A stretch of DNA of 64,000 bases from Sminthopsis crassicaudata (lineage: Eukaryota), in the NCBI RefSeq assembly GCF_048593235.1, contig NC_133619.1:637710558-637774557 (forward strand), written 5' to 3'. Position numbers and translations under genes: made by a program. This document shows positions 19,880 to 63,950 of the stretch, piece after piece. How positions within the stretch are numbered: the stretch's first letter is position 1; every line of letters starts with the position of its first letter. A model generated the notes under the pieces. The model was not told the origin of the DNA, did not search any database, and worked only from the letters and a program-made list of their open reading frames with translations.

Positions 19880-22349
19880 CAGCTACCATCCCCAGGTCTC
19901 CAGGCCAGAGAACTGTGTCTCCAAGCTCCAGATGAGGGGACTCCACCCTGGGACCCAGGGGCAAGAAAGGAACTCAAATTCTCTCTTTGTTGGGTATAAA
20001 CCTACCTGTCCCCACTCACAGAAGCAATCCCTAAATCTTGATGGGGGGGAAGAAAAGAGGGGAGACTGAAGCAGAGCTCTCCCCATTTTCCTCCAAAGGT
20101 GACCTCCATCCCTACCTCACATCCTCCTTTCTTCCCTTCCTTGGTTAAAGAGAGTTCCTATGACCTCTATTATTCCCCAAACTTGGGGGGGGGGCAGGCA
20201 GAAGGAAGCACTCGCCTACTAGAAGCAGGACTTGTCAATCTGAGAATTAGCATGCAAAGGAGGAGGTGGCAGCAGGAGGAGATTAAAGCAGTAAAGTCAC
20301 CAAACAATTTAATTGCTTCAGGGAATGGGGAAATTAGAGGGAGGGGAGGGGACTGATCTTCCAAGATTACCCACCTTGCCTGAAAGGAGGATGGGGTCCA
20401 AGTGGACCCCATGACAAAGAAGCCTGGAAAACCACAGTTGGGGAAAGAGAACCAAAGGATCCCAGTGTTAACCTTCTCTGAGTCTCTAGTGCCAGGAAAG
20501 CCCCTTCATTACTGGAAGGGACCTGGTGGCCGTTGCCATGGAAATAATGACAGTGACCTTGGGCCCCCAGCCACCTTTTCACCATTTCACCATTGATTGA
20601 GGTTTCACAGAGGAGGGGCAAGAGTTTCCAACCCGGTCCTTCCCTCCTCCCCCTTCCCTTCCCTTCCCTTTCCTTCCCTTCCTTCCCTTCTTAACTCTTC
20701 CATCTCATCCTCACAAAGTAAGGAGAGAGAAAGCCAGGATGGAGATGTTAGTACTGGGGCTCTCTTCAAAGGACAGAAGTCTTGTGATGGAGCACAGAGG
20801 CAGACTCAGTTTTCCTCCCCTCCACATGAAACCATTTCCCTGATCACAGGGTGGACTGTCCACCTTCATTGGGTCCCAGCTTCCTGAACCCGAAAATGGG
20901 CATGTTTTAATGTTCTGTGATCTCATCGATTTTTTTCTGATTTCTTGCTGGGCAAAGGTGTCAGGGTGTTGGACTGAGAGACTCTGAAGGCCAGAGATGG
21001 AAGGCTTAAGGCCTTCCAGAGAAAAAGTTTTCCATGACTTAGTAAAAACCACCACCTTAGAAAGAAAAATCGGATTCTTGATGGATTTTAGGAGGGAAAA
21101 GGAATGCTCATGGAGTACCTTTCGATTTCTCTGCCCCTGGAGGCTTGGGGTAACTTGCCCCTTCCCATGTACTTGGAGTCCTTTAGACAAGGGTGTAAGA
21201 AAGGAACCCGAACTGGGCAGGGCCAATCGGATGGTAGAATGACTAATCAGAAGAGACATTTCAGAGGCTTTTGTCCAATCCAGGTTGAGTAGAGCAGGGT
21301 GTGATCTGAGGACCAGTTGGAAAAGGTACCGAGTAGGCTTCTGCTCAGGAATGGCCAGTACAGAGCAAAAGTACAGGACTCCTCTCCTGATGGCTCGCTC
21401 AAGGCCACTCGAAGGGTTCTGTCCAATCACCTTGTTACTTTGTCCCTTAGCTTCCGACTCAGTTGAATGGGAAGGCTTGGCCCAGGTGACCTAGCCCCCT
21501 TTTGGCTTACAGGTGTGCCCCTATCATCCTTAAGGTTCCTTCTGAGATTCTCTCAAGCCTGGAGGGTGTCTTGGAGCAATGGACTAGAGCAGCCACCAGA
21601 TGAAGCAGGAGATGGAGAGGATGCTGTGAAAGGCTTTTGGGGGACTGGGGATGCTGAGCAGCAGGATTGCAGAGAGGCCTTGGGGAGGGATGAGTGGGCT
21701 GAAGTCTGTTCTAAGTATACCTTCCCTCCTCCCTTTCTCACCCCTCTGCCGAACCAGACTCAGAGCCCTGGCTTTCCAGGTTTTGTTCCTCCCCGGCTAT
21801 CCCATCCTTTTTAGGCTCAGTCCAGGTGGGGGTCTTCTTGGGGGTGTTCAAGAAAGAACTGAATCATCCTATCATAAATAGACCAATCGGCAGGCCTGAC
21901 GGGTAGACTATGGAAAGAAGGCTGTTGGTTTGGGCGAGGCCAGGAGGGCCAGGGAGGTAGACCACAAAGATGGAGCCCCAAATGTCCTTTCCCTGTCTAC
22001 AGTTATTGAGCACCTCCTGTGTACAAGGGCTGCTAGCCATAGCTGTCTCTGGCCCAGGCGTTCCCTGGCTTTGTCTGGGTGCCCTCTGCCAGTCGGTGGG
22101 GTCAGGGTCCCTCCCGGTTCAGCCTCCAGGGCTCCCTGGCTCTTCCTGGGGCCTTCCTCTTCCATCTCTGGCCCAATCTCTTCCCCCTCTTCCCCGCTCC
22201 ACCGGGGCCCTCCTCCTCCTGCAGCAGAATCTCGCCCCCACGTGTGTCCATCTGGTCCCCGTAGGCAGGGGACCCAGGTATCCTGACATCCCAGGGTCCC
22301 GGACCTGGCACGGCCCCTCCCTCTGCGGAGAGAAGAGGGGGCCAAAGCC

Positions 22350-23350
22350 CGACCGCCATGGTTGGGGGCGCTGCGACTAGGCTGGGGGCCTGGGTGGGGA
22401 GGGGTCCGCCGTGCTCCGGCTCCCGGGGCCGGGAGCAGGGGAGGGACCCAGGCGCGCCCGCCTCCCCGCCCCCTCGCCCCTCCCTTCCGCTCCCCTCCCC
22501 CCCTTTGCAGATCGGGCGCACGCGCCCCGCGCTGTGCGGAGGGAGGAGCCGCGCGCCGAGCTCCGGCTGTACCGCGCCCCCCCCGCCCCCTCCCCCCAGC
22601 CCTCCCGGCCCCGGCCCCCCTCCCTCCTTCCCTCCCTCCCTCCTCCGTCCCCATCCCCCTTCCCTCTCCGTCCCCTCCCCTCCCCTCCCCCCGCCATGGC
22701 GCGGACCGAGGCGGCGGCGGCCGGAGCCAGAGCCAGAGCCCGGGGCCGGGCCGGGGCCGGGGCCGGGCCCCCCCGGAGGTGAGCTCGGGGCCCGGGGTGG
22801 GGAAAGCGGGGGACGGGAGCGTGTGTGCTGGGTGCCGGGCGCCGGGGCGGTGGGATGTGTGCGCTGTGGGATGTGTGTGCGCGCGTGTCCGCGCCGCTGC
22901 GGCGCCCCGGTCCGGGTGTCCGGGTGTGTCTGTGTGCGCGTGGGGGGGCCGGGTGGTGGGGGCGGAGGGCGGGGGGTCCGCGGCCGCGCCGGCCCGGGTG
23001 TCTGGCGTGCCCGGCGCCTGGTGCTCGTGGGAGCGTGCGGGCTCCGGCGTGTCCGCGGATGTGTCCGCCCGTTGGTGTGTCCGTGTGTGTCTGTCTGCAT
23101 CTGTGTGTTGCCGTGTGTCTGCGTGTGAGGGGCCGTGTGTGTCCGCCCGCGGCCCGGACGTCTCCCCGGCGCTCCGACCCGTCCATGTGCCTCCGTGGGT
23201 GTCCAGGTGTCTGGGGACAGCTCCTACCTTAAGCCCTTGGGAGGGGGATGGGTGGAGGGGAGGGGAGGGGGGGCACCGTGGGCCTGGGTCCCTGGGGCTT
23301 CCCCCCCTGTCATTTCCTCCCTGGCCGGGAGCGGCCCCGGGCTGAGTGGG
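22350..23350 (+). promoter_or_regulatory. LRFN1: LRFN1 CpG-island promoter and first (5'UTR) exon ending at 22778
   Basis: CpG island 3-4 kb upstream of the LRFN1 ATG; strong donor ggag|gtgagc at 22778/22779. Confidence 0.7.
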
Positions 23351-26333: not shown

Positions 26334-27748
26334 ATGGCCCCAGGATCTTCTTCATCATCATCTCCTCCATCTCCAGCCCTGCCCCTCCTTCTCCTCCTGT
26401 GGGCTGGGGCACCCCCATCCACTGGGCAGCCCTGCCCAGGCCGTTGCATCTGCCAAAATGTATCCCCGACTCTGACCATGTTGTGTGCCAAGACTGGCCT
26501 GCTTTTCGTCCCACCGGCCATCGACCGCCGGGTAGTTGAGTTACGGCTGACCGACAACTTCATCGCCGCCGTGCGCCGCAGGGATTTCGCCAACATGACC
26601 AGTCTGGTCCACCTCACCCTGTCCCGCAACACCATCGGCCAAGTGGCCCCTGGTGCCTTTGCCGACCTCCGGACCCTCCGCGCCCTCCATCTGGACAGCA
26701 ATCGCCTTGGGGAGGTGCGGGGCGACCACCTGCGGGGCTTGGTGAACCTGAGACACCTCATCCTGGGCAACAACCAGATCCGCTGGGTGGAGCCGGCCGC
26801 CTTCGATGCCTTTCTGGGTACCGTGGAAGACCTGGACCTGTCCTACAACAACTTGGAGTCTCTGCCCTGGGAGGCCGTGGGCCAGATGGTCAACCTCAAC
26901 ACTCTCACCCTGGACCACAACCTCATCGACCACATCGCCGAGGGCACCTTTGTCCAGCTCCACAAACTGGTCCGGCTGGACATGACCTCCAACCGGCTGC
27001 ACAAGCTGCCCCCCGACGGGCTCTTCCTGCGCGCTCAGGCCTCGGGCCCCAAGCCACCGTCCACGCTGACGGTCAGCTTTGGGGGGAACCCTCTGCACTG
27101 CAACTGTGAACTTCTCTGGCTGAGGAGGCTGACCCGGGAGGATGACCTGGAGACGTGCGCCACACCCGAGCACCTGACTGACCGCTACTTCTGGTCCATC
27201 CCGGAGGAGGAATTTCTTTGTGAGCCGCCCCTCATCACACGCCAGGCGGCCGGCCGTGCCCTCGTGGTGGAAGGCCAGGCCGTGAGCCTGCGCTGCAAGG
27301 CGGTGGGTGACCCCGAGCCTGTGGTGCACTGGGTGGCCCCCGACGGGCGGCTGCTGGGCAACTCTAGCCGCACTCGAGTTCGGGGGGACGGGACCCTCGA
27401 AGTGACCATCACCACCCTCCGAGACAGCGGCATCTTCACTTGCATAGCCTCCAATGCGGCCGGGGAGGCCACGGCCCCTGTGGAGGTGTGCGTGGTGCCT
27501 CTGCCGCTCATGGCGCCGCCCCCTGCTGCGCCGCCCCCCCTCAGTGAGCCCGGGTCCTCGGACATTGCCACACCGGGGCGGCCGGGGGCCAATGAGACTG
27601 GCTCTGCCGGGGCCGAGCGGAGACTGGTGGCCGCGGAGCTCACCTCCAGCTCGGTGGTCATTCGCTGGCCTGCCCAGAGGCCTGTGCCCGGCATCCGCAT
27701 GTATCAGGTGCAGTACAACAGCTCTGCTGATGACTCGCTGGTCTACAG
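26334..27748 (+). CDS. LRFN1: LRFN1 (SALM2) coding exon 1: signal peptide, LRRs, LRRCT, Ig domain, start of FN3
   Basis: [68 protein letters not shown]. Acceptor ctcctctag at 26309; phase-2 donor tacag|gtgag at 27748. Confidence 0.98.
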
Positions 27749-27914
27749 GTGAGTTTGTGCTGAGCTCACCCCCTCCGGGGCACCTGAACCTGTTCCTCCA
27801 GCTGGGACCCAAGTCTCTTTTTCTGTCTCCATCATCCGTTTTCTCTTCCACTCTCACTCTGTGTCTCTTCATCTCCGTCTCTCCATTTCTTCCTCTTCCA
27901 CCTTTTTCTTTCTT

Positions 27915-28053: not shown

Positions 28054-30308
28054 TCCACCTCTGTTTTTTGTTCCCTTTTTCTTTCTTTCTCAGTCTCTGT
28101 CTCTGCACGGCCCTTTGACCCTTTCGCCCCTCCCTAGTCTCCTGAAGTCTCAGAACAAAAAAGGGACATGGCGTCCCCTCGGTTTATGGATACCAAGGGA
28201 GGGGACGGGGCTCTGTTGGTCACACCGGGAAGACTCCCCAAATTGAAAAGTCCATCTCTTCTGTCTCTGTCTCTTCCCATATCCCTGCCATGTTTGGGGT
28301 GCAAAAATAACCCGCCCCCACATCTTCCTCCAGCCCCCTTGGGACCAAGAATGGGCGGATGGGTCTAATTCCAGTTCCTTCAAGGAATGATAAAGTGGGG
28401 AACCAGCTGAAACCCTCCCTTCCCTCCCACTGATTCCCCCAGCACCCCCTCCCAGTGCTGTGAGGGTTAATTTGTAAGCCTGCCTAGATGGGCTGAGGTC
28501 TCACCCAACCAGAAGCCATCTTTTACTCCAGGCTGCAAGCTCCTGACCAATCAGATCTTCTTGGGCCTGGAGGGGTCTTTAAAGAGCCCGGGGGCCCAAT
28601 CGGACGGATTAATTCCGAAAGAATCCCCGAAGTTTCGGGGAGGGAGTTCAGTGGCGATCTGGAGGCTGAGGAAGACTTTCCCTTTAGAGCCCGCGCCTGG
28701 ACGAGGGGGCTTTCAGGGAAGGTGGGGCGGAGAGAGGGCTGGGGCCGGGAGAGGGGCGGGGCTTAGGAAGAGCGGTGGGCGGGGTTTCTCGCATTTGACA
28801 TTTCTTGGAGAGAGGGGGAGGGCCCTGTATTGTGAGAAGGCGAAGGCTTCTGGGGCGTGGCGGATGCGGAGTGTGGCTGTCTGTCCAGGTTAGGGTCGCC
28901 CTCGCCGCCTGGGGGTACACGTTGGCCTTGGGAAGGAGCGGGAAGCCCCTCAGGCCAGAATAAAGGAAAGCGAGCTCCTTAAGGATGATAATTGCCACAA
29001 TGATAGTAATGGCCTTTTAATTGCACTTTCGAGTTTGCAAAGTGCTTTTCTTCCCTTAATTCTTGGGCCCGGACTCTGGGGACCACGACCCGAGGCGCCC
29101 CGCCTGGTTTAGAATCTCAGATAAGGTGAAACAAGGATGCCCATAATGACCGCTATTACTCAGCCTTGCGCTAGACACGTTGGCTTTAGCCGTGAGAAAA
29201 GCAAAAGGAATTAAGGGAATTAGAGAGGGAATCTCAGATACCTGGGCGCCAGGTTTTCGGAGTGAGGACGCCCCCTGGTGGTTTAGGGGTTAACGGACTT
29301 ACAGGAGGTTCCACGTTGAGTGTATTTCGGGCCCATGGCGGTGGGGAAAGGTCAGGGTTTGAGGGAGGCTGCCCGCCATGGCCACGGTTTCGGGAGGCCG
29401 GCTGGAGGAGCCGCGGGGAGTAGGGCAAAGAATGCTGCGCCTGGAGGCAGGAAGCCTGGGGTTCAAATCGCTGCCTCGGGCACTTATTTCCCTTGTCAAG
29501 AAATCTCTCTCCCGCTGTTACGCGGTAGATCCAGATCCTGCGCATGACAATACCTGTCCCCACAGGGTGATTGTTGCGCGCAAAGCATTTGGAAAGAAGC
29601 CATAAAGCGCTGTCATCCTGAGGCCCCGAGCTAGGTGGGAGGGGAGGGTCCTGAGGGAGGCAGGAGGAACCCCCGAGGCCCGGCTCCATCCAGCCGCCAG
29701 AGGACTCATTAAGGCTAAGGCCGGGATCCAGAGCCTGAAGAGGTTAGCGTTTCCTCAGTTGAAGATGTAGGGCCCGAAGGGACCTTAGAGGCCCAGGCCC
29801 CGCTTTTGCAGAAGAGGACACTGAGGCACTGATGGCTGATGTGGCGGGTAGAGCCAGAGACACGAGACTGTCTCCCTGGGATTCAGAGGGAAGCCTTGGA
29901 GAAGGTGGGACTTGAGCAGAGACCTGAGGAATCGGATTTGGAACCAGGTCCGCTGCTCGAAATCGGACAAGGGGGTGTCGGGGATCGGTCCCAGGGCTTC
30001 CCAGACCGCCTGGCCCCGGGCCAGTTCCGAAAACTACCTGGACTAAGGCTTCTGAAACTGAGGGGCGGGGCGTGCGGGGAGGAATCTGGGCAGCTCCACG
30101 GAGGGGCGGGGTTTAGGGAAGGAGGCCTGGTTGGCGGGTGGTTGGGGTTTGGTCAAGGGGCGGGGCCTGCCCTACGACAGCCTAGTGCAGTCTAGACTGA
30201 AGGGAAGAGCAGCCGGGGTTTGCTTGAAGGGGCGGGGCTTCCTGGACGGGAGAGGCGGGTGCTCACTCCCGTTTCTCCCCCCCCCCCTCCTCTCTCCCGG
30301 GACCCCAG

Positions 30309-31231
30309 GATGATCCCGTCGAGCAGCAAGACGTTCCTGGTGAACGACCTGGCGGCGGGGCGGGCGTACGACCTGTGCGTGCTGGCCGTGTACGACGACG
30401 GAGTGACCGCGCTGACCGCCACGCGCGTCGTGGGCTGCGTGCAGTTCACCACGGCCGGGGAGGTCACTCCGTGCCGTCCGCTGCACGCTCACTTCCTGGG
30501 GGGCACCATGATCATCGTCATCGGCGGCGTCATCGTGGCCTCGGTGCTCGTCTTCATCGTCATCCTCATGATCCGCTACAAGGTCTATGCTGGCGGCGAC
30601 GCCGGCTCTGGCCACAAGGGGGCGCCGCCGCGCGTCAGCCACGTGTGCTCGCAGACCAATGGTGGTGCCGCGGGCTCCGGCTCGGCCCCGCCCCCGCCCG
30701 CCGCTCTGGACCAATACGAGGCTCTGCACGAGCTGGCGCCCGCGCCGTCGGGGCCAGACAAGGAGAAAGTCAAGGTCGAGGCCGAGGGGGCGGTGGCGGC
30801 GCAGCCCGCGGCGGTGGAGGCGGAGCGGCTCCCGGCCCGGCCGCTGGGCGGCGGCGGCTCCTCCACGTCGCTCTGCCTGCTGCCCTCGGGGACCGAGGCG
30901 GCGACGGGCGGGCCGGAGGAGGACGGGCGGCCGCAGCTGGGACCCGCGGGCCCGCGGCGAAGCCGCTCGGGGGCTCCCCTGGGGACCTCGGCGCCGGCCT
31001 CAGCCCCCGCGCTTCCCCCGGGCCGGACCCCCCCGGCAGCGCTACTCTTTCGACGGGGACTATGGCGCACTCTTCCAGAGCCACAGCTACCCGCGGCGGG
31101 CCAAGCGGACAAAGCGCCACCGCTCCACGCCCCACCTGCTGGACGAGGACGGGGGCTTGGGCGGCCTGAGCCCCGCGCGGGCCCGCCTCGCCTTCACCAG
31201 CACCGAGTGGATGCTGGAGAGCACCGTGTGA
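30309..31231 (+). CDS. LRFN1: LRFN1 coding exon 2: FN3 end, TM, cytoplasmic tail, PDZ-binding ESTV; apparent +1 frameshift at 31028-31034
   Basis: Acceptor cccag at 30308, then [53 protein letters not shown]. The conserved tail [33 protein letters not shown] (TGA 31229-31231) is in the next frame; removing one C from the C7 run joins the frames (GRTPRQRYSF). Confidence 0.93.
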
Positions 31232-34060
31232 GCGGGAGCCCGGGACCTCGGCCCGGCCGCGGGCGCCTCCCGCTCCCCAGCCGCGGGGAGTGCGTGCCCT
31301 CCTCTCCACCCGAGGCGCGGACGCCCGGGGCTTCCGGGGGGACACTTGGGCCATCTGGACGCCTGGGACCCGAGGGGAGAAGGGGGACCGGCCGGGGGGA
31401 GAGGGGAGGGGAGGGAGCCCAAGGGAAGCCCCGCTCCTCCTCGGCCCGGCCTCGCCCACGCGCGGGGAGGGGCTGGGTTGGAGGGGGAGGGGAGTAGCAT
31501 GGACGCGTCGGGTCTCCTCTCTTCCCTTTTCTACCCCACCCCGGGTTCTTCACGCGCGCTCCGGGACCTCGCGGGAGCCGGTGCCTTACACAGCGGAGCG
31601 CGGGGCGGACACTTAGCAGCACTGAGACACGACACTCCCCACCGGGGACTGGTGGATGCAGCTCCGGGAGGCCCTCCGGGGAGGAGGCGCCCACCGGGGC
31701 AGGGGAAGGGGGGTTGTGGGGAGGGGGAGGGGGGCCTATTTATTGTATCTGGCTGGACTAGATCTTGTTCTGTCGCGTGTTTCCCCGAATCATGACCCCG
31801 TAATCATCCCCCTCCTCCCACTGCCACTCTCTCGCTCTGCCCCCACGGACCCTCACTCATCCCCTCCCTGACTCCAAGGATCACAGTGTTCGAGCCGGAA
31901 GGGGCTGAGACACCCTAGTGTGCTCCCTGCTCCATTGTACATGCGGGGAAACTCGCCCAGAGAGGGAACGGGATTTGCCTGAGGACACACAGCCAGTTAG
32001 TGGCACAGCCGGGCTAGAATCGGGGTCTCCCGACAGCCAGGCTGTGGCTCTGATCGATGCACCACACTGCCTCCTCTTCGTCCTCCCATCTTTCCCTGTC
32101 ACTTCCATCACCCTCATCTCTCTGCCCCCTCCCCCAATCATACCCATCTCTCTGACCTCCCCACCCCTGACTCTCCCTCCTCATCTTCATTCTGGGCTGG
32201 TCCTGGCCTTGGACTCAGGGTTTCCCTTTGTAGGCCTGGAACTAGGACCTACCCCAAACCAAACCAAATCCTCTTCCATCCACACCCCTCCCCCTAGCCG
32301 GGGGCTTCCAGTCGCAGCAGAATTAAACTTTTCTGTGTCTGAGCCCCCGAGTGATGTGTGTGTGGAGAGGGTGGGGAAGGGATTGAGGTTAGAGTTCAGG
32401 AAAGGGCAAGAGATGGTGCCCAGAAAGGCAGCAAATCCCCGGAGGAGCATGGGAAAACAATCCTCTTTAGAAGGGGAAGAGCCATGGGGCTGCTGCTGGG
32501 GGACATGGGAAGAGGAGGTGAGTGGCAGACTGAGTAAAGGGGCCAGCAGTAAGGAGGTGCAGAGCTCCTGGTGGCAGTGGCAAGCTAGGGTAGGGTTTGG
32601 AGAGCTGGAAGGATCAGCAAAAAGGCAGAAGACAGAAATGGTGAGGGGAGGCAGGGAAGGGGTGTCCTTAGGGACTCAAAACTCCTCCCTACCTGGTCTG
32701 GGGATGCATATATGAGGCCCCAGTTTCCTGGGTTTGCCGGGGGCAGAGCCAGCCCTATGTCCCCTTGGGGCCAAGCAGGCGGGGGATGGAGAGAGACAGA
32801 AATAGAAGCAGAGACGTCTTTGAGAGAAGGGGAGGATGGAAACAACTGCAGACTGCAGAGGGGGGATGGGAGGCCAGCAGGGAGGCTGAGAAACTAAGCA
32901 GGGACAGAGACAGTGGGGTGGGGAGAGGGGGAGAGACAGACCCTGCAGGGGCAACAGCATCTCAATAAATGTTCTAGTAATCGTTGGGGGGAGAGAGTCA
33001 GGCTAAGAATGGAGGCAGAGAGAAAGAGGGAAGGAGATAGATTCAAAAAAAGGAGGAACACAGCTAAAAGAGAAAGGGAAGCCGGCAGCAACAAAGGTTA
33101 TTTTGGCCAAGATGGATTCAAAGGAGGCTTTCACTTGACATAGTAGCTCCTGATGGGTTCTCCCCAGAGCCCCCTTAATCATACTTTGGAACGCCCCAAG
33201 GTCTCTGCCAACCAGCTCCAGCTCTCAGTAGGCTCCACTGCAAAGAGGAGGTACTACACCCCCAAGTGAAGCCCACAATGGCAGAAAGGGAGCGGGGTTA
33301 GGACCCATCACCGAGAGCTTGGAATGCTCCTGTGAACTGGGCTCGCTTTCACAAGAGGCAGACTACTTGACTTTAAAATCAGAGCATCTTGGCAGAGGTC
33401 CCAGTTGGGACTTGGAAGCCCCCACACTAACGATCGAGGACAAAACTAGCCAAGAGGGCAGTGCTTGGAAATGTGGATTTCCAGAAGGCTGAAGGTCTCC
33501 ATCAACATTGGCTAATTTCCTTCTCATTAGCTTCAGCTAACTGGGGAGCTTTTCTCTGGCTCCACAAGGTGACTGGGAGATAGGAGCAAACTCCGAGGAG
33601 CCAGAAAATAAATCTTGACTCCAATGGCATAAATGTGAGGGTGGATTTTTGCAAAACACGGGGTTTTGAATGTGTAGTGTGTGGAATAACTCTTCATACT
33701 CTCCTTACGGAAAGTTGGAATTAAAGTGAATTTTTGTGTTTACAGCTCACCCTATCCCCCAATGACTCTGAAACCATTTTCTCCTAAAGAAGCCATGCCC
33801 AGATTCTGGTCCACTTAGGCATTATGGACATTCTTTTAAGCCATTTCTGTGCCCAAACCCAAGCAGTCCAAGGATTCTGAAGTATCACCAAAAGTGATAC
33901 TACGGTATGGAGAAGATGTGAGGTTCAGAGGTAAGCACACTGCATTTAAAGTCCGAGGACTTGAGTTTAAATTCTGTTTTTCATCTCATACCAGCTGTGT
34001 GACCTTAAGCAAGTCATTTGACTTCTCTGGGCTTCAGTTTCCTCATGTAAAATGAAAGAG

Positions 34061-35699: not shown

Positions 35700-35940
35700 A
35701 AAGGAAAGGGAAACAGACAAAGAAACAAACTCAATAAGAGAAAATCCCAAAGAGACAGAAACGGCACAGAGGAGATAGAGAGGGGGGAGGGGGAGGGGTC
35801 TGACGTAATCCTAGCTTTGGTGGTGAAAGCGTGACTCGTGCCCGTTTGAAAAGCCAGGGGAAGTCTTGGCAGGCTTGGCCCTCGCACGTTTTTATTGGTT
35901 TTCTCTCCGACCGCCCCCTCACCGCTAAAAGATAAAATCC
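35700..35940 (+). promoter_or_regulatory. IFNL4: Putative IFNL4 promoter (IRF-, NF-kB-, ATF/CRE-like, CCAAT, GC-box and TATA-like motifs)
   Basis: GAAAGGGAAAC 35704-35714; AGAAAATCCC 35739-35748 (reverse GGGATTTTCT); TGACGTAA 35801-35808; ATTGG 35894-35898; CCGCCCCC 35911-35918; GATAAAA 35931-35937. Confidence 0.5.
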
Positions 35941-36065: not shown

Positions 36066-37699
36066 ATGCCATCGGGCCTCAGCTTCCCCATTTCCTTCAT
36101 GCTGGCGCTCTGGGTGCTTCGGGGCTCAGGCGACCCCGGCGTCCGGCGCCCAAGGCGCTGCAGCCTCGGGCATTATTACTCGCTGAATCCCGAGGCAGTG
36201 ACGGTTGTCAAAACGTTCAGCAATTTATACGTGAGTCCCGGAGCCAGGACTTCCGAAAGCCCACTTCTCCAGCCCTCCAGCCCTTCCCAGGCCAGGGGTT
36301 CAGACAGGCTCCCCCCCTTTTGCCCCCAGCTGCTCAGGGACTTAAGTATCTGGAAACGTGGCCAGCTCGCCAGCATAGTGGAGCGGAGACCGCTGAGAAT
36401 GCTGGGATACTCGTATTCGAATTCTGCCCGGGATGTCGCCTAGCTGTGGAATAAGCCTTGGCTAGGATCCTTAATAGGATGATGACCGACACGGTCCTCC
36501 CCGGGTTGTGGCCCAGGCCAAAGGAGAGAATACAGGGGAAAAGCCTTGCGAGCCTCAGAGAAGTCTCTGGAGGCCGCGAGCTGGCTTCGAGTTGGGTCAC
36601 CTGGGGCACGTCCTGGCCGGGTGACTCTGGCTAAGTCACCTCCGGGAGTTCTAGGTGATTCTCTAAACGGCCCTGCAGTGCTGACCTCCCTTGGCCGCCG
36701 CAGCCCCCAGCCTCAGGATTCCTGAGTGCTCTATTATTAGGACATTCGAAGCCTCCCGGAGTCTCAGGCACACTCCAGCCTCGTCCTTCCAGTCTCCCGG
36801 GAGTCTTGCTTCCCTAAAGGTTTTCTTCCTCCTCCTCCTCCTCTTCCACCATCTCTTCCCCCTCCTCCCCTCCTCCCCCAGGAACAAGAGATGCTGAGCT
36901 GGGAAAAGAGGAATTGCTCGTTCTCTAGGCGAAAGGCAACCCAGAAAGTCACGGTGAGACCCTAGGACATGGGGGAGGGGAGGGAGCCTTGGGAGGCTGC
37001 TCCCGGGACATCCCTCCAAGTGGCGTGTGTCTCCCCCAGCCCTGCGCCCGGCTGCGTCAGGTGGCGCTCGCTCTGGCCGCCGCCGAGTCCGTGGTGCGGA
37101 ACCTGCGCCTCCCCGCTCTGGCTGCCAGCGCCGGTCCGGTCCTGGAGCTGCTCTGGGCCGTGCGGAGCGATGTGCTCGCCTGTGTGAGCCCGCCCAGCCT
37201 CGGCTCCCCCTCTCAGTCTTCCGCCGGTCCAGACTCTGCTGACGGCGGAGCGCGGGCGGGCAGATCCAGGGAAGCGGCCCGCTTAGCGGAACCCCGGCTG
37301 GCGGAGAATCACCCCCTGACGCAGCCCGGGACGCGGGCCTCGGAGAGCGCGCGCCCCGGACGGGGGGGAGGGGCTCAGCCCCGAGATTTCGACACTCAAG
37401 GCCACGGCAAGCTGGACCGAGTGGATCGGGGCTCCAAGAAAAAGAGAAGAACACATAAAGCGGCGAGCTCGGTGAGAGTGCCCTGGGCGGGAGGGAGGAG
37501 AGCCAGAAGATCGGGGGCGGGGAAGTTGGAGGGGGAGGAGAAGGGGAGCGATCCCGAAGCGAAAAAAAGCGAAGATGCGCGCGTTCTCCGCTAGGAAAGT
37601 CCTCGATGTCGCGAAGCGGAGACCGTTCTCGGCCTCCTCAAGCTGCTCACGTCGGACCTGAAGAAGGCGATTCTCGCCGGGCCCTGCGCCTCAGCTTAA
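36066..37699 (+). CDS. IFNL4: Interferon lambda-4 orthologue, 5 exons, 181 aa, intact
   Basis: Exons 36066-36230, 36882-36953, 37040-37183, 37412-37471, 37595-37699, all phase 0 and GT-AG; the exon 4 acceptor is the least certain boundary. Protein MPSGLSFPISFMLALWVLRGSGDPGVRRPRRCSLGHYYSLNPEAVTVVKTFSNLY|EQEMLSWEKRNCSFSRRKATQKVT|PCARLRQVALALAAAESVVRNLRLPALAASAGPVLELLWAVRSDVLAC|LDRVDRGSKKKRRTHKAASS|ESPRCREAETVLGLLKLLTSDLKKAILAGPCASA*. It matches recalled human IFNL4 blocks PRRCLLSHYRSL, LSWGQRNCSF, CARLRHVA, AGPILELL, DSPRCRKA and GPCL; exons 2 (72 nt) and 3 (144 nt) equal the human sizes. Confidence 0.93.
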
Positions 37700-45579: not shown

Positions 45580-47150
45580 TAAAGCTTTTTATTTTTCAAA
45601 ACAGCAGCCAATTCTTCAACATTAGCCCTTGCAAAACCCTGTCTTTTAATCCCCCCCTGCCCCCATGCCCTCCCCAGATGGCAAGTAGTCCAATATATGT
45701 TAAACATGGTAGAAATATGTTAAATCTAATATATGTATATATGTTTATACAATTGTGCTGCACAAGAAGAGAGAAGCAAAATAAAATGCAAGCAAACAAC
45801 AATAACAAAGAGTGAAAACGTTATGTTGTGAACCACACTTAGTTCCCACAGTCCTCTCTCTGGGTGTAGATGGCTCTCTTCATCACTGAACAATTGAAAT
45901 TGGTTTGAATCATCTCATAGTTGAAGAGAGCCATGTCCATCAGTCTGGATCATCTTATAATCTTTTTGTTGCCATGTATAATGATTTCCGGGTTCTGCTC
46001 ATTTCACTTAGCATCTGTTCGTGTAAGTCTCTCCAAGCCTCTCTAAAATCATCCTATTGGTCATTTCTTACAGAACAAATACATTCCATAACATTCACAT
46101 ACCATAACTTATTCAGTCATTTTCCAATTGGTGGACATTCATTCAGCTACAAAAAAGAGCTGCCACAAATATTTTTGCATATATGGGTCCCTTTTTTTCC
46201 TTTAAGATCTCTCTGTCAAATAAGTCCAGTAGAAACTGGGTCAAAGGATATGCACAATTTGATAGCCCTTTGGTCATAGTTCCTAATTGCTTTTCAAAAT
46301 GGCTGTATCAGTTCACAACCCACTAACAATGTATTAGTGTCCCAGTTTTCTCAGTTCAATATCCTCTCCAAACATTCATCATTATCTTTTCCTGTCATCT
46401 TAGCCAATCTGACAGGTGTGTAGTGGTATTCAGCGTTGTCTTAATCTGCATTTCTCTGATCAATAGTGATTTAGAGCACTTTTTCATGACTGGAAATGGT
46501 TTTAATTTCTTTATCTAAAAATTGTTCATATCCTTTGACCATTTATCAATGAAGAATGGCTTGAATTCTTATAAATTTGAGTCCATTCTCTATATATTTT
46601 AGAAATGAGGGCTTTATCAAAACTTTTGAATGTAAAAACGTTTTTCCAATTTATTGCTTCCCTTCTAATTTTGTTTCTATTAATTTTGTACAAAACTTTT
46701 TAACTTAATATAATCAAAATTATCTATTTTGTGTTCAATAATGAACTCCAGTTCTTTGGTAACAAATTCTTTTCTCCTCCACAGATCTGAGAGGTAAAAC
46801 TATCCTATGTTCTTCTAACTTGTTTATATCATTCTTTATGTCTAGATCATGAACCCATTTCAAACTTATCTTGGTTTACAGTGTTAGGTGTAGGTCAATG
46901 CCTACTTTCTGCCATACTAGTTTCCAATTTTCCCAGCAGTTTTTGTTAAGCAGTGAGTTCTTATCCCAAAAGCTGGGGTCTTTGGGTTTGTCAAATACTA
47001 GATTATTAAAGTTATTGACTATTTTGTCCTGCGAACCTAACCTATTCCACCGATCAACTAGTCTATTTCTTAGCCAATACCAAATGGTTTTGGTGACTGC
47101 TGCTTTATAATATAGTTCTAGATTAGGTACAGCTAGGCCACCTTCTTTTG
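45580..47150 (-). mobile_element. L1 3' fragment (ORF2 C-terminal remnant plus 3'UTR)
   Basis: Minus ORF 46876-47208 reads GGLAVPNLELYYKAAVTKTIWYWLRNRLVDRWN (L1 ORF2); T-rich 3' end at ~45585. Confidence 0.9.
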
Positions 47151-47659
47151 TAATGAAGGGCAAAAATATTGAGAAATGTGGTTCAGGATAAAGAATGACA
47201 TAGTCCAAAAACTAATAGAAGAAGTCTCACACTCAATGAATACTATTTTAGAGGAAAGACCTAGAAGACACTGGTTATGGGAAGCCGTAAACAACATTTT
47301 TTCCTCAACAAATTTTAAAGGGTATTAATAGATCATTTTCAAAGTGAAGAATGCAAGCTATAAATGATCCTATGAAAAAGTCCATAATAAGTTGTTGTTC
47401 AGGGGTTTCACTAATGTACCCTTCCCCATGACCTCATTTGGGGTTTTCTTGGGATTTGACATTTCCTTCTCTAAATCATTTTACAGAAATGAGGAAACTG
47501 AAGCAAAGTGCCCAGTATCATACAGCTAATAAGTTTCTAAGACTAGATTGGAACTCAGGGCTTCCTGATGACTAATAATTAGAAAAAATGCTAATTACAA
47601 CTCTGAGGATAATCTCACAGTTATCAGATTGATTTTCTTAGTTTTTTTTTTTTTTTTTA

Positions 47660-48660
47660 AGGAAAGTGATAATTAGGAAAAGATAATTATAAATGTTGGA
47701 GGGAATGTGGGAAAACTGGGACACTAATACATTGTTGGTGACATCGTGAACTGATACAGCCATTTTGAAAAGCAATTTGGAACTATGCCCAAAGGGTTAT
47801 CAAATTGTACATACCCTTTGATCCAACAGTCTTTATATTAGGTCTATATCCCAAAGAAATCATAAAAGAGGGGAAAGGACCCACATGCGAAGATGTCTGT
47901 AGCAGCTTTTTTTATATAGTGGCAAGGAACTAGAAATTGAGGGGATACCCATCACTTGGGGAATGGCTGAATAAGTTATGGTATGTGTTTGTTAGGGAAT
48001 ATTATTGTTCTTTTTTCTTTTCCTGAGGCAATTGGGGCTAAATGACTTGCCCAAGGTCATATAGCTAGGAAGTGTTAAATCTCTGAGGTCTGATTTGAAC
48101 TCAGGTCCTCCCGACTTCAAGGCTGGTGCTCTATCCACTACACCACCTAGCTGCATTTCACAAGAAATGATCAGCAGGATGATTTCAGAAAGACATGAAG
48201 TGACTTACATGAACTGATGCTAAGTAAAATGAGTAGAACCAGGAGAGCATTGTACACTGTGGCAACAAGGTTATGTTATGATAAACTCTAAGGGACTTGG
48301 TTCTTTTCAACAGTGAGGTGATTCAGGCCAGTTTCAATAGACGTGATAGATAGAGCCATCTGCACCCAGAGAAAGGACTGTGGGAACTGAGTGTGGATCA
48401 TAACATAGTACTTTCACTCTTTTCATGGTTGTTTGTTTACCTTTTTTTTTTTCTTTCTTTCTCATTTTTGTCCCCTTTTGATTTGATTTTTTCTTGCACA
48501 GCATAATTGTGGAAATATGTATGGAAGAATTACATTATGTTTAACATACATTGGCTTACTACCTGTCTAGGGAAAGGAAACAGAAAAATTTGGAACGTGG
48601 GGTTTTTCAAGAGTAATTGTTGAAAACTATCTTTGCATGCATTTTGAAAATTTAAAAAGT
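47660..48660 (+). mobile_element. L1 3' fragment interrupted by a minus-strand SINE (48011-48154)
   Basis: 'aaatgttggagggaatgtgggaaaactgggacactaatacattgttggtg..' through the 3'UTR; SINE reverse complement inserted after 'gaatattattgttc'. Confidence 0.85.
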
Positions 48661-48929
48661 GATTATTTTTAAAGGGAAATGATAATTGTTGGATAAAATA
48701 GAATTTTTTCATATATTTGTGCTGAAAATATCCAACTTCCCCTCTGTCTTTTCATCCCGAAACATCTTCTGTTACACTGCCCCCCTTCTCCCATTCTCCC
48801 TCTGCCTCACCCCATCCTCTTTTTTAAGGAGAGACCCACCTTCTGATTTTCTAGTCTTCCACACTAAAACAAGAAACAAATCATTCCTGAATTGGCTCTC
48901 CATGAGATTAAAATAAGCACAGAGGTAAA

Positions 48930-49370
48930 TTTCAGAAATACCTGGAAAGACTAATATGAACTGATGCTAAGTGAAGTGAGCAGAACCAGGAGAACATCTT
49001 ACACAATAATAGCAACATCAGATGATGATCAAATATAATTGACTTAGCTCTTCTCAGTAATAAAATGATCTAAGACAATTCTAAAAGACTCATGATAGAA
49101 AATGCTGTCCGTATTCAGAACTATGGAGTCTGAATGCAGATCCAAGCATATTATTTTCACTTTGTTGTTGTTTTTTTCTTTCTCATAATTTTTCCTTTTT
49201 GTTCTGAGCCTTCTTTCACAACATGACTAATATGGAAATAGGTAATATGAATGTACATGTATAACCTAAGTCAGATTGCTTGCCATCTTAGGAAAGGGAA
49301 ATGAGAGTGAAGAGAAAAGTGGAAATTGAAATACTATAAAAATAAATGTTGAAAACTTTAAAATAAATAA
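48930..49370 (+). mobile_element. L1 3'UTR fragment
   Basis: 'gaactgatgctaagtgaagtgagcagaaccaggagaacat..' ending in an (AAAT)n tail at ~49350-49375. Confidence 0.75.
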
Positions 49371-50249
49371 ATAAAATTAGCCTAGAAGAGGTGAGTAGAT
49401 CAAGGAAGCCCTTAATCAGTTTGAAAAGTTCCCTAATTAACTTGAAGCAGATCGTCTATTCTCCTAGCTTATGAAAATCCCTCCTATTCTAGGCTTTCTA
49501 GATTCTTTCATTTTTTTATGTGTACCTTGTTCCAGATGAAAAGGGATTTTGAATGAAAAGAATGAGCGAAAATGCACTTTGTTATTCAATCATATCCAAT
49601 ACTTTGAAATTTCATTTGTGGCTTTTTGGGGCAGAGATACTGGAGCAGTTTGCCATCCTTTCTCCTGTTCATTTTATAGATGAAGACTCTGAGATAAGGG
49701 ACTTGCCCAGATCTGAGTTAGAAAGTTTCTGAGGTCAGATTTGAACTTAGGAAAATAAGTCTTCCTGATTCTAGACCTGGCACACTACCTACTTTGGGCA
49801 ACCATCTTGATGCCCAAAAAAGATACTGTGCCAGACAACTTTGTACTCACTCTTAGTCAATAAACATTTATTAAGATCCTACTATATATCTAGAGAAAAG
49901 TAAAAGTTCCTATTTACTGTGTAATGGAAGAGATGCAAGTTACTGCAAATCTAAAAACCAAGCTGTATTCAGGATGAATTGGAAACAATCAGCAGAACAT
50001 GCTTAACCTATATTGATTTACTTACTGGCTTGGGGGAGGGGGGAGGGAAAAAGACATGGAACACAAGGTTTTACAGAGGTGAATTTCAAAAACTATCTTT
50101 CCATGTATTTGGAAAAATAAAATATTTTGAAAAAAAATCATCAGAATGAAGGCACCAAAATTAAATAGAATTGGGAAAGGCTCGTTGTAGTAGAATTATA
50201 TCTGGCTTTTGAAGAAAGAAGGGAGGCCAGAAGGTGTAGATGAGGCAAA

Positions 50250-50860
50250 GAAAACTGAGAAGGGTACTATCCCTGAGCCCCAGTCTCTTGTATAGAAGAT
50301 TCTTTAGGGATAAGGTCCAACAAGTCATGAAAGTAAAGAATCTTCTGGAATGAATTCACGGGCTCAAACTATCTCCAGATCAGGGGTCTATATGGAATAA
50401 ACTAAGTGAAGATTCTCTCATAAGAATGTGGCTTCAATCTATCCCCTAATTATAATTTGAGACTTTGCAATAAGTTAAGCTACAGTTAACAAGCTGCAGC
50501 TGTTCAATTGTCTGGAGTGAACATTCCCCTCCTGTTTCCCATCACCTCTTAATTAGCATTGAAGTACTTCTTTTAAAGGCAATTTATTCTTTTGTTTCTG
50601 AGATAGATTTCCATGTTTAGAGAATATGCCTGGACACTCCCAGATAATGAGAGAAAAGATCCAGAGGGGGCCTTCTGTTCTATTTAATCTTGTATTTTGC
50701 AGTTTGGGCTTTGCACTTCTTTAATTGACATCTTGTCAGTTAGGAGTTGCCCTTTCTCGCCAGATCTTAATAAATCCTTTTTTGCTTTTTCTTACTCTGA
50801 GAGTCTCTATTGTTTTCATGGCCACTACGTTACGGCACAGGGCACAGCTTTATTGTGTCT
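50250..50860 (+). mobile_element. Probable solo LTR (family unknown)
   Basis: Non-L1 block with AATAAA (~50769) followed by a short U5-like segment; LTR-like layout only. Confidence 0.35.
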
Positions 50861-51159
50861 AATTGTATAAGATAACTATCAGCATCAGTATAGGATGGCT
50901 CTGTCTGTATAGGATAACTCCATAGGGTCAACTTACTACTCACTAGGACTTACTTAGATACTGAGTTGCTACCAGAGACATGATCTTTTGCTGGAGTCCC
51001 TTCGTGACATAACTAGAATCTAGACAGACTATAGTGTTTCTCTCTCTCCCCTCTCTCTATGTCTCTGTCTCTCTTTGTTGCTGTCTCTCTCTGTCTTTCT
51101 CTCCCTCCCTCTCTCTGTCTCTCACATTCGCTCTCTTCCTTCTCTCCCTCTCTCTGTCT

Positions 51160-51299
51160 NNNNNNNNNNNNNNNNNNNNNNNNNNNNNNNNNNNNNNNNN
51201 NNNNNNNNNNNNNNNNNNNNNNNNNNNNNNNNNNNNNNNNNNNNNNNNNNNNNNNNNNNNNNNNNNNNNNNNNNNNNNNNNNNNNNNNNNNNNNNNNNN
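51160..51299. other. Assembly gap (140 N) next to a (CT)-rich repeat
   Basis: Run of N after a CT/TG low-complexity tract at 51036-51159. Confidence 1.
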
Positions 51300-51434
51300 T
51301 GAATTATAAAGAGAAGATTATCTGTGTAGCGCCAACTTGGAGAGTTGTCTGTGAGTACTTCTAAGTTAAGAGTTCTCCTGTTGGAGTATTTGAGCATCGG
51401 ACATAAAGAGATTTCTTGATTCAATGTCCTCCCT

Positions 51435-54099: not shown

Positions 54100-54101
54100 T
54101 A

Positions 54102-54133
<32 letters not shown>

Positions 54134-54451: not shown

Positions 54452-54488
<37 letters not shown>

Positions 54489-62893: not shown

Positions 62894-63950
62894 ATGAGGA
62901 CTCCGCAGACTCTCCCGCTGCTGCTTTGTGCCCTGATGTCAGGGGCGATTTCGAAGTCCCTGGCCCCGACTCCCAGCAGCCTTCCCCCCGAGAGGAGCTT
63001 CCAGATCAGCCACTTCAAGTCTCTTTCGCCTCGGGAGCTGGAAACCTTCAAGGTGGCCCAGAATGCCTACGTGAGTTCCTGGAGTGATTTTTGTACCCCA
63101 CTCCTCCCATCCCTCACTTCCCGGGGTCTAACCTCGACCTCTTTTACTGCGCTCTAATATTATCTCTGGCACTGAGATCTAACCTTCATTTTTCCTTCTT
63201 GAACTCTGTCGCTTTCTCTGTTTCTAACCTCCGTCCTACATCGCAAGGACCTAGAAGAGTCACAAGCCTTTAACTCTTTCCTCTTCATCCCCCAAAGGAG
63301 AAGATCATGATTCAGACGGAGAGGAAATGTAGCTCCCGATTCTTCCACAGAAACTGGGACCTTCGGCAGCTGCCGGTAAGAAGGGGCGCTCCCCACCTGT
63401 CAGTCCCCCATCGCCTGTCTCCGAAATCTGTAGCCTCCCCATTTCTCTTCCCCCATCTGTCGGTCCTCCCCGTCTCCTTCCCCTGTCCCCTTCATCAGCC
63501 TCTCCCTCACATCGCCTCTCATCTCTCCCCTCACAGCCGTCCGTCCGGCCCCTGGTCTTACAGGCTGAGCTGAAATTGACTCTGAACGTCTTGAAAGCCG
63601 TAACCAAGCCTGAGCTGGACAGAGTTCTGGCTCAACCCCTACAAACGCTCAGCCACATCTACCAAGAGATCCAAAGCTGTGTGAGTACTGGAGGATGGGC
63701 GGGGCTCCCCTGGACCAATGGGCATGGAGCTGTTCCCTGTCTCTCAGGCGCCTCTGTCCCTTGCAGTGAGGCTGAGAGGCTGCAATACCTGGATTCCTCC
63801 CTCTCCCCCCACCCATCAAGTACCCGAGTTCCCCTTCTCTTTTATCAAGTCCATCCTCTCCCTACACAGGTTACTTCCAGGCCCTCTAAGGAACACAGGC
63901 CTCCAGGCCGCCTGAAGAATTGGCTGAACAAGCTCAGTGAGGCCAGAAAG
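62894..63950 (+). CDS. IFNL3: Interferon lambda-1/3-like, exons 1-4 (exon 5 beyond the window; paralogue name by position only)
   Basis: Exons 62894-63070 (MRTPQTLPLLLCALMSGAISK..QISHFKSLSPRELETFKVAQNAY), 63298-63375 (EKIMIQTERKCSSRFFHRNWDLRQLP), 63537-63680 (PSVRPLVLQAELKLTLNVL..QPLQTLSHIYQEIQSC), 63870-63950 (VTSRPSKEHRPPGRLKNWLNKLSEARK), all phase 0 and GT-AG. Carries the IFNL1-3 hallmarks FKSLSP, WDLRQL, AELxLTL, QPLxTL and GRLxxWL. Confidence 0.93.

What the first reader, a model, noticed from the sequence alone, without database searches (positions are those of the whole stretch)
36066..37699. Intact, hidden five-exon IFNL4 orthologue in a marsupial
Seen: five phase-0 exons assemble into an open 181-aa secreted cytokine with a signal peptide, six Cys at positions 32, 67, 81, 127, 152, 178 (human 27, 62, 76, 122, 152, 178) and the N-C-S glycosylation sequon (36912-36920). 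No single ORF in the track shows it. Known: human IFNL4 is polymorphically destroyed by the exon-1 dG/TT frameshift, is absent in mouse and rat, and is very divergent from IFNL1-3. Here exon 1 is in frame, and the protein is clearly distinct from the IFNL1/3-like gene in the same window. Inference: the IFNL4 versus IFNL1-3 split predates the marsupial-eutherian divergence, and this may be an unannotated antiviral gene; prior annotation status cannot be checked here.
Basis: partly seen in the sequence, partly recalled or inferred. Interest (0 to 1): 0.9.

Follow-up and report, generated by a model that had tools for sequence, protein, structure and literature searches.

The report
Dunnart IFNL4 orthologue, already annotated
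The window holds an intact copy of the antiviral cytokine gene IFNL4 in a marsupial, the fat-tailed dunnart; NCBI already labels it "interferon lambda-4-like", and the one unexpected feature is that its third intron looks as if it is translated in marsupials.

Summary
Five GT-AG, phase-0 exons (36066-36230, 36882-36953, 37040-37183, 37412-37471, 37595-37699, + strand) join into a 181-aa protein with Cys at 32/67/81/127/152/178 and one N-C-S sequon.

The genome is Sminthopsis crassicaudata.

Orthology to IFNL4 is well supported:
- Every named hit of an exhaustive protein search is IFNL4-like.
- The solved IFN-lambda4 chain matches at E 7.6e-20, against 0.08 for IFN-lambda3.
- In an ML tree a 100/100 branch separates IFNL4 (platypus, marsupial, eutherian) from IFNL1-3 (marsupial, eutherian). 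An all-marsupial clade is rejected (AU p 6e-51).
- Exon boundaries match those of cat, elephant and bat.
- The order LRFN1, IFNL4, IFNL3-like is shared.

"Hidden" and "unannotated" are wrong. NCBI has an "interferon lambda-4-like" protein at this locus (270 aa, a different and probably flawed exon model). Devil, Antechinus and platypus carry the same name; the wombat homologue is listed as uncharacterized.

New here: "intron 3" (37184-37411) is stop-free and a multiple of 3 in length in three dasyurids, and it keeps frame in wombat. Its donor G is lost in devil and wombat, and its acceptor is weak. The real product may therefore be about 257 aa, with a disordered insert.

No earlier scan report of this on other DNA was seen. 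Interest is modest: a new member of a known kind.

The parts
35932..35938 (+). TATA-like box (GATAAAA), about 130 nt upstream of the ATG
   Evidence: Motif scan. The block AAAGATAAAAT is identical in dunnart, Antechinus and devil. Its function is inferred.
36066..36230 (+). Exon 1: ATG, signal peptide and start of helix A (55 aa, Cys32)
   Evidence: It is 78% identical to an intact Antechinus exon 1 with a conserved GTGAGT donor. The boundary ...Y|E matches cat, elephant and bat.
36882..36953 (+). Exon 2: 24 aa with the N-C-S glycosylation sequon (36912-36920) and Cys67
   Evidence: It has the same length (24-25 aa) and boundaries as eutherian exon 2. The exon 2 to exon 3 junction is used in the NCBI devil and Antechinus models.
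37040..37183 (+). Exon 3: 48 aa, helices C-D, Cys81 and Cys127
   Evidence: It is 144 nt, as in cat, elephant, bat and platypus. dN/dS against the other dasyurids is 0.42-0.47.
37184..37411 (+). 'Intron 3' of the five-exon model: 228 nt, in frame and stop-free; probably translated in marsupials (76 extra residues, predicted disordered)
   Evidence: Only frame 0 is open in dunnart, Antechinus and devil. Their lengths are 228, 246 and 234 nt, and the indels are 9, 12 and 9 nt. Wombat keeps the frame at 55% aa identity. The donor reads ATG in the devil DNA, and the wombat protein has Met at that codon. The acceptor is aag with a Py fraction of 0.50. pLDDT is below 50 in the wombat model.
37412..37471 (+). 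Exon 4: 20 aa, basic (KKKRRTHK), homologous to eutherian exon 4 (25 aa)
   Evidence: The donor GT(G/A)AGAGT is conserved in three dasyurids. It evolves fast (dN/dS about 1).
37595..37699 (+). Exon 5: helix F, Cys152 and Cys178, Glu154 (37613-37615), stop codon TAA
   Evidence: Pfam IL28A positions 130-153 match at E 8e-4. It aligns to PDB IFN-lambda4 residues 123-166.
26334..27749 (+). Upstream neighbour: LRR + Ig exon of an LRFN1-type gene (synteny anchor)
   Evidence: Pfam LRR_8 6.6e-35 and I-set 1e-14. The same neighbour lies upstream in devil, Antechinus and wombat.
62894..63950 (+). Downstream neighbour: exons 1-4 of an IFNL1-3-like gene (62894-63070, 63298-63375, 63537-63680, 63870-63950); exon 5 lies beyond the window
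   Evidence: It groups with the devil IFNL1-3-like proteins in the tree.

Best explanation
This is the dunnart (Sminthopsis crassicaudata) orthologue of IFNL4. It is an intact, selectively constrained type III interferon gene lying between LRFN1 and the IFNL1-3-like genes. It encodes a secreted, N-glycosylated helical cytokine with three predicted disulfides. By homology this cytokine should bind IFNLR1 and IL10RB and induce interferon-stimulated genes through JAK1/TYK2 and STAT1/STAT2. Shown here: the gene structure, orthology, synteny, purifying selection and fold (the fold on the wombat orthologue). Inferred: secretion, receptor use, antiviral function and expression. I think it slightly more likely than not (about 55%) that the stretch between exons 3 and 4 is not removed in marsupials. 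The main product would then be about 257 aa, with a 76-residue Pro/Ser/Gly/Arg-rich disordered loop between helices D and E, rather than 181 aa.
For: Identity: exon 3 is 100% identical to NCBI 'interferon lambda-4-like [Sminthopsis crassicaudata]'. An exhaustive phmmer search of 1.84 billion representatives gave 29 hits; every one that carries a descriptive name is IFNL4 or IFNL4-like, and none is IFNL1-3. Against PDB, IFN-lambda4 (9bpu_C) matches at E 7.6e-20, IFN-lambda3 at 0.08 and IFN-lambda1 at 0.16. Identity is 44-46% to eutherian IFNL4, 23-30% to any IFNL1-3 and 26% to the dunnart's own IFNL copy. Tree: a 100/100 branch separates the IFNL4 side from the IFNL1-3 side. Marsupial plus eutherian IFNL4 has 98/96 support, with platypus outside. 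AU rejects a single marsupial clade at p 5.8e-51. Structure: exon sizes are 55/24/48/20/34 aa against 56/24-25/48/25/32 in cat, elephant and bat, with identical boundaries. Synteny: LRFN1(+), IFNL4(+), IFNL3-like(+). IFNL4(+) is followed by an IFNL3-like(+) gene in cat, elephant, bat and platypus. Constraint: dN/dS is 0.44 over exons 1, 2, 3 and 5 against Antechinus, Fisher p 0.0015. Fold: the wombat orthologue model has high-confidence helices, and its best PDB match is IFN-lambda4 (E 1.3e-6, TM 0.84 by target). Intron 3 read-through.
Against: No transcript, protein or functional data exist for this gene in any tool used. No Logan or ENA-derived protein carried this exon 3. No canonical poly(A) signal lies within 1.6 kb of the stop. 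No NF-kB site (GGGRNNYYCC, on either strand) was found upstream of the ATG in the stretch scanned from 35000, and the one ISRE-like motif (35704) is not conserved in Antechinus. Pfam IL28A scores on single exons stay under the gathering cut-off. For the long-isoform reading: the dunnart donor GTGAGC is a good consensus. Substitutions in the stretch are nearly neutral (dN/dS 0.6-0.9). The 3n-indel test alone gives p 0.058. GC-rich introns are also open by chance in a bat.
Confidence: 0.8

Rival explanations
1. The canonical five-exon, 181-aa protein is the only or main product, exactly as in eutherians. The open frame through intron 3 is a by-product of high G+C content and close relatedness.
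For: The donor GTGAGC and an AG sit at the positions homologous to the eutherian and platypus sites. Intron 3 is ancestral: it is present in platypus IFNL4-like, in eutherian IFNL4 and in IFNL1-3. The intron length of 228 nt is close to the cat's 227 nt. A bat IFNL4 locus is also open through introns 3 and 4. The indel test alone is only p 0.058.
Against: The donor G is replaced by A in devil and wombat and is followed by a poor context in Antechinus. The acceptor is aag with the weakest polypyrimidine tract of all 13 sites compared. All three dasyurid lengths are multiples of 3, and only frame 0 is open. The frame and 55% aa identity are kept out to wombat, the same level as exon 1.
Confidence: 0.4
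2. It is a silent or decaying relic: an open reading frame that is no longer expressed or useful in dasyurids.
For: There is no expression evidence. No poly(A) signal lies nearby. No conserved IRF or NF-kB sites were found upstream. In the devil assembly exon 1 is absent, the exon 2 acceptor reads CG and the exon 3 donor is lost.
Against: The ORF, all splice sites and the ATG are intact in dunnart and Antechinus. dN/dS of 0.44 is significantly below 1. All six Cys and the sequon are kept. The devil gap lies in an odd, homopolymer-rich stretch that looks like poor assembly.
Confidence: 0.12
3. It is a marsupial-specific divergent duplicate of IFNL1-3 that only resembles IFNL4.
For: The marsupial IFNL4-like branch is long (0.76), and the tree tool warns that long branches meet.
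Against: The AU test rejects an all-marsupial clade (p 5.8e-51). Exon 2 length, the sequon, the Cys pattern, the basic exon 4 and the position upstream of an IFNL3-like gene all match IFNL4. Sequence searches find IFNL4 only.
Confidence: 0.01

Closest known systems
Eutherian IFNL4 (interferon lambda-4; solved in complex as PDB 9bpu)
   Same: It has the same five-exon, phase-0 layout with identical boundaries. It is 44-46% identical. It has six conserved mature Cys, a single N-X-S sequon at the N61-equivalent position and Glu at position 154. It has a basic exon 4 and lies just upstream of, and on the same strand as, an IFNL3-like gene.
   Different: Exon 4 is 5 residues shorter. The gene is 25 kb rather than 2-4 kb from the next IFNL gene, and it lies next to LRFN1. 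Intron 3 is frame-preserving with a degenerate acceptor, so it may be coding. Nothing is known of its expression or activity.
NCBI and Ensembl marsupial and monotreme models: 'interferon lambda-4-like' in dunnart, devil, Antechinus and platypus; 'uncharacterized' in wombat
   Same: The dunnart entry is the same locus and the same gene. All the marsupial models read through intron 3.
   Different: The dunnart model (270 aa) enters exon 2 at an internal acceptor (36929) in another frame and reads through intron 2. It therefore loses the sequon and Cys67. The devil and Antechinus models lack exon 1. The Antechinus model also misses exon 5.
IFNL1-3 (IL-29, IL-28A, IL-28B), including the dunnart copy at 62.9 kb
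   Same: They share the Pfam family (PF15177), the fold, the intron positions and, in eutherians, the receptor pair.
   Different: Identity is only 23-30%. They lie across a 100/100 branch in the tree. Exon 2 is 26 aa and lacks the N-C-S sequon. Helix E in exon 4 is different.

Membership tests
IFNL4 orthologue group | Sequence is closer to IFNL4 than to IFNL1-3 | tested here: met
   phmmer over 1.84 billion representatives: every hit that carries a descriptive name is IFNL4 or IFNL4-like. PDB IFN-lambda4 matches at E 7.6e-20 against 0.08 for IFN-lambda3. Identity is 44-46% against 23-30%.
IFNL4 orthologue group | Groups with eutherian IFNL4 in a tree that also holds marsupial and eutherian IFNL1-3 | tested here: met
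   The central branch has 100/100 support and marsupial plus eutherian IFNL4 has 98/96. AU rejects an all-marsupial clade at p 5.8e-51. There was no non-mammalian outgroup.
IFNL4 orthologue group | Five coding exons, phase-0 introns, homologous boundaries | tested here: met
   Caveat: whether intron 3 is removed in marsupials is open.
IFNL4 orthologue group | Six conserved mature cysteines and the single N-linked sequon of exon 2 | tested here: met
   Cys 32/67/81/127/152/178 and N66 correspond to 27/62/76/122/152/178 and N61 in macaque and capuchin. N61 is named as the unique glycosylation site in PMC6767866.
IFNL4 orthologue group | Conserved genomic position in the LRFN1 to IFNL cluster, upstream of and co-oriented with an IFNL3-like gene | tested here: met
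   Window. Devil, Antechinus and wombat. Cat, elephant and bat. Platypus. The human gene order is from memory only.
Type III interferon (Pfam PF15177 IL28A) | Pfam IL28A match above the gathering score | tested here: inconclusive
   Only single exons could be scanned. They scored 14.9, 19.7 and 21.8 bits against a cut-off of 27, but at collinear profile positions. The precomputed Pfam entry for the NCBI protein of this locus lists PF15177.
Type III interferon (Pfam PF15177 IL28A) | Class II helical cytokine fold | tested here: met
   Tested on the wombat orthologue as a proxy (60% identical). Helices have pLDDT 80-93. The top PDB matches are IFN-lambda4 (TM 0.84 by target), then IFN-lambda3 and IFN-lambda1.
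Type III interferon (Pfam PF15177 IL28A) | Signals through IFNLR1/IL10RB and induces ISGs; induced by infection | not testable with these tools
   No expression or functional data. This needs the bench work listed under next steps.

The most novel reading that the evidence does not exclude
In australidelphian marsupials the ancestral intron 3 of IFNL4 has been turned into coding sequence. The donor decayed at a CpG, the acceptor degenerated, and length and frame have been kept for tens of millions of years. Marsupial IFN-lambda4 would then carry a lineage-specific disordered insert of 76-82 residues between helices D and E, which could change its secretion, matrix binding or processing.
Probability: 0.5. 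Interest if true: 0.45.

Novelty: new member of a known kind. Interest (0 to 1): 0.35.

Why it matters
IFNL4 is medically notable in humans: it is a polymorphic pseudogene tied to hepatitis C clearance, and it is missing from mouse and rat. Non-eutherian orthologues help to date the gene and to show which features are ancestral, namely Glu154, the single glycan and the cysteine pattern. This window gives a clean marsupial copy, a corrected exon model and tree evidence that IFNL4 and IFNL1-3 separated before therians split, and probably before monotremes did. It is an incremental result, because automatic annotation already names these genes. The possible exonisation of intron 3 is the only part that a specialist might not expect.

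Tried and rejected
1. I tried to widen the last protein search by aligning the window's own IFNL copy-1 exon pieces (A3, A4). I dropped this because most columns would have become insertions. I used stop-free exon 3/4 frames from dunnart, bat and cat instead (A5).
2. Wombat DNA could not be fetched, so wombat evidence is at protein level only.
3. Six literature searches that paired IFNL4, IFN-lambda4 or interferon lambda with marsupial or monotreme terms found no paper describing a non-eutherian IFNL4. Key et al. 2014 say only 'present in most mammals analyzed', N=12.
4. Promoter motifs: the ISRE-like site at 35704 is not conserved in Antechinus, and there is no NF-kB consensus upstream. I make no claim about induction.
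5. The 3n-indel test taken alone is not significant (p 0.058). I use it only together with the other lines of evidence.
6. The spliced 181-aa and 257-aa dunnart proteins have no reference, so I did not hand them to the remote tools. I used them only inside scripts.

Full report
**1. The observation**

The sequence at 36066-37699 contains five segments: 36066-36230, 36882-36953, 37040-37183, 37412-37471 and 37595-37699.
- Each segment is a multiple of three in length.
- Each is bounded by ...ag|exon|gtgag..., with an ATG at the start and TAA at the end.
- Joined, they translate without a stop into 181 residues, with Cys at 32, 67, 81, 127, 152 and 178.
- The only N-X-S/T sequon is N66-C-S at 36912-36920.

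Only one such gene lies in the window.

**2. What genome this is, and whether the gene is hidden**

A search with the stop-free frame that holds exon 3 returned three proteins, all named by NCBI "interferon lambda-4-like":
- Sminthopsis crassicaudata (P0001, 100% identical);
- Sarcophilus harrisii (P0002);
- Antechinus flavipes (P0003).

P0001 maps onto the window as 36066-36230, 36929-37471 and 37595-37696. The locus is therefore already annotated.

That model loses the conserved EQEMLSW.KRNCSF block, including the sequon and Cys67.

Wombat has two models, P0004 and P0005, both "uncharacterized". Platypus has an "interferon lambda-4-like" model, P0041.

**3. Is it IFNL4 rather than IFNL1-3?**

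- **Exhaustive search.** A phmmer search of 1.84 billion representative proteins with P0001 gave 29 hits at E<=0.001. Every hit that carries a descriptive name is IFNL4 or IFNL4-like, from dog, sengi, golden mole, ferret, tenrec, bats, rhinoceros, chinchilla, primates, pangolin, mole and platypus. No IFNL1-3 protein reached the threshold.
- **Solved structures.** Human IFN-lambda4 (9bpu_C) matches at E 7.6e-20, IFN-lambda3 at 0.08 and IFN-lambda1 at 0.16.
- **Global identity of the 181-aa protein.** It is 44-46% identical to cat, elephant, macaque and bat IFNL4 and 60% to wombat. It is 23-30% identical to cat, elephant, bat and devil IFNL1-3-like proteins, and 26% to the dunnart's own IFNL copy at 62.9 kb.
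- **Pfam.** IL28A hits on single exons are weak (14.9-21.8 bits, cut-off 27) but collinear along the profile.

**4. Tree**

I gathered 26 eutherian IFNL4 proteins. I also gathered 24 eutherian and 5 devil IFNL1-3-like proteins (queried with stop-free exon 3/4 frames from dunnart, bat and cat). To these I added:
- the platypus and wombat proteins;
- an Antechinus protein assembled from L002 at the homologous exons;
- the 181-aa candidate;
- exons 1-4 of the dunnart IFNL copy 1.

The careful ML tree (61 rows, 190 columns, LG+C20) shows the following:
- A central branch with 100/100 support separates the IFNL1-3 side from the IFNL4 side.
- On the IFNL1-3 side, the marsupial group has 97/90 support and the eutherian group 96/95.
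- On the IFNL4 side, platypus lies outside marsupial plus eutherian (98/96), and the marsupial group has 100/99.

Forcing all ten marsupial rows into one clade costs 96 log-likelihood units (AU p 5.8e-51). This four-cluster topology does not depend on the root, and it implies a duplication before the marsupial-eutherian split. The placement of platypus suggests the duplication predates monotremes as well. There was no sauropsid outgroup, and the tool warns about long branches.

**5. Gene structure and synteny**

Exact mapping of the cat, elephant and bat IFNL4 proteins onto their loci gives exons of 56, 24-25, 48, 25 and 32 aa. The boundaries are ...RY|EE...|SC...AC|L and ...|(D/E)SP.C. The dunnart has 55, 24, 48, 20 and 34 aa with the same boundaries.

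The window is collinear with the devil and Antechinus loci. Its gene order, all on the + strand, is:
- an LRFN1-type LRR+Ig gene ending near 31.3 kb;
- IFNL4 at 36.07-37.70 kb;
- an IFNL1-3-like gene starting at 62894.

In cat, elephant and bat an IL28A-family gene follows IFNL4 on the same strand after 2-4 kb. In platypus one follows after about 9 kb. Wombat also has the LRFN1-type gene immediately upstream. That human IFNL4 lies just upstream of IFNL3, inside the SYCN to LRFN1 interval, is my recollection and was not tested.

**6. Is the gene alive?**

- Antechinus has all five homologous exons intact, including the ATG and all splice sites.
- Over exons 1, 2, 3 and 5, dunnart against Antechinus gives dN 0.113, dS 0.257 and a ratio of 0.44, with a Fisher one-sided p of 0.0015. 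Intron 1 divergence is 0.16.
- The six Cys, the sequon and Glu154 are kept. Glu154 is the high-activity residue that PMC6181419 and PMC6767866 call ancestral in mammals.
- An AlphaFold model of the wombat orthologue, built from 31 aligned sequences, has confident helices (pLDDT 80-93). Its best structural match in the PDB is IFN-lambda4 (E 1.3e-6, TM 0.84 by target), followed by IFN-lambda3 and IFN-lambda1.

Secretion, receptor use and antiviral activity are inferred from homology only. There are no expression data, no nearby canonical poly(A) signal and no conserved IRF or NF-kB site upstream.

**7. The unexpected part: "intron 3"**

The 228 nt between exons 3 and 4 (37184-37411) are in frame with both exons. 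They have no stop in that frame, against 3 and 1 stops in the other two frames. Other evidence points the same way:
- **Other dasyurids.** The homologous stretches in Antechinus (246 nt) and devil (234 nt) are also multiples of three and open only in frame 0.
- **Indels.** The three indels among the dasyurids in this stretch are 9, 12 and 9 nt. In introns 1, 2 and 4 and the upstream region, only 10 of 29 indels are multiples of three. Fisher p is 0.058, so this line is weak on its own.
- **Wombat.** The wombat protein keeps the frame over the whole stretch at 55% amino-acid identity. That equals exon 1 (55%) and exceeds exon 4 (50%).
- **Donor.** The first base of the donor is A in devil (TGC|ATGCCC in the DNA), and the wombat protein has Met at that codon. 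Antechinus has a poor donor (GTGTCC). The dunnart keeps GTGAGC. The differences sit at a CpG, so repeated loss is plausible.
- **Acceptor.** It is aag|C with a polypyrimidine fraction of 0.50, the weakest of 13 sites compared. Eutherian and platypus exon 4 acceptors are (c/t)ag with 0.65-0.85.
- **Other lineages.** Eutherian intron 3 lengths (227, 220 and 188 nt) are not multiples of three. Platypus has a true 455-nt intron there. IFNL1-3 genes share the same intron position. The intron is therefore ancestral, and the marsupial state would be a derived exonisation.

Evidence against this reading:
- Substitutions in the stretch are nearly neutral (dN/dS 0.6-0.9).
- G+C-rich introns can be open by chance, as in a bat.
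- The dunnart donor is intact.

In the wombat model the stretch is disordered (pLDDT below 50, residues 130-200), and it lies between two well-predicted helices. I put the read-through product (257 aa) at about 55% and the 181-aa product at about 40%. Both could be made.

**8. What is known**

- Key et al. 2014 (PMC4199494) state that IFNL4 is present in most mammals analysed, is absent from mouse and rat, and is under purifying selection (dN/dS 0.23, N=12).
- Paquin et al. 2016 (PMC4722605) compared 12 orthologues and do not mention marsupials or monotremes.
- Six full-text searches found no paper that discusses a marsupial or monotreme IFNL4.
- The databases do carry automatic "interferon lambda-4-like" entries for dunnart, devil, Antechinus and platypus.
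- A solved IFN-lambda4 receptor complex exists (9bpu, released 2025).

**9. Verdict**

The evolutionary inference is supported. The claim that it is hidden or unannotated is not.

What this check adds:
- a corrected exon 1-2 model compared with RefSeq;
- a formal tree and AU test;
- conserved synteny from platypus to eutherians;
- the lead that marsupials translate what is intron 3 elsewhere.

It is a new member of a known kind, of modest interest.

Noticed in passing
window 62894-63950 (residue 36 at 62999-63001): The IFNL1-3-like gene downstream has exons 62894-63070, 63298-63375, 63537-63680 and 63870-63950; exon 5 lies beyond the window. It has Phe where the devil paralogues and eutherian IFNL1-3 have the first conserved Cys (RSCQISxFKSLSP).
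   Followed up: partly
L001:9086-9975 (devil, GCA_902635505.1): The stretch that should hold IFNL4 exon 1 and intron 1 is replaced by odd, homopolymer-rich sequence. The exon 2 acceptor reads CG. This is either a poorly polished assembly patch or a real loss of exon 1 in the devil.
   Followed up: partly
window 36929-37039: The NCBI dunnart model (P0001) uses an internal acceptor (ctctag|G at 36929) and reads through intron 2 in another frame. This replaces the conserved glycosylated part of exon 2 with 37 unrelated residues, and is probably a gene-prediction artefact.
   Followed up: yes
L006:10001-13105 and 21831-23072 (platypus): The platypus IFNL4-like gene has exons 1, 3, 4 and 5, but no exon 2 equivalent was found by tblastn. 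An IFNL1-3-like gene lies about 9 kb downstream on the same strand.
   Followed up: partly
L004:1961-3365 (-) and 10001-11402 (+) (Asian elephant): There are two IFNL4 genes of 186 aa in inverted orientation. Some eutherians therefore carry a duplicated, apparently intact IFNL4.
   Followed up: no
window 26334-27749 and about 30220-31497 (+): These are LRFN1-type exons (LRR_8, I-set). The second long ORF has no Pfam hit and is probably the low-complexity C-terminal exon.
   Followed up: partly
window 45800-56700; gap 51160-51299: Several segments here match each other's counterparts in the devil and Antechinus loci on both strands (70-84% identity), so they look like interspersed repeats. One 140-N assembly gap was left untouched.
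   Followed up: no
window 35801-35808: A perfect CRE-like octamer, TGACGTAA, lies 265 nt upstream of the ATG and is conserved in Antechinus. Its relevance is unknown.
   Followed up: no
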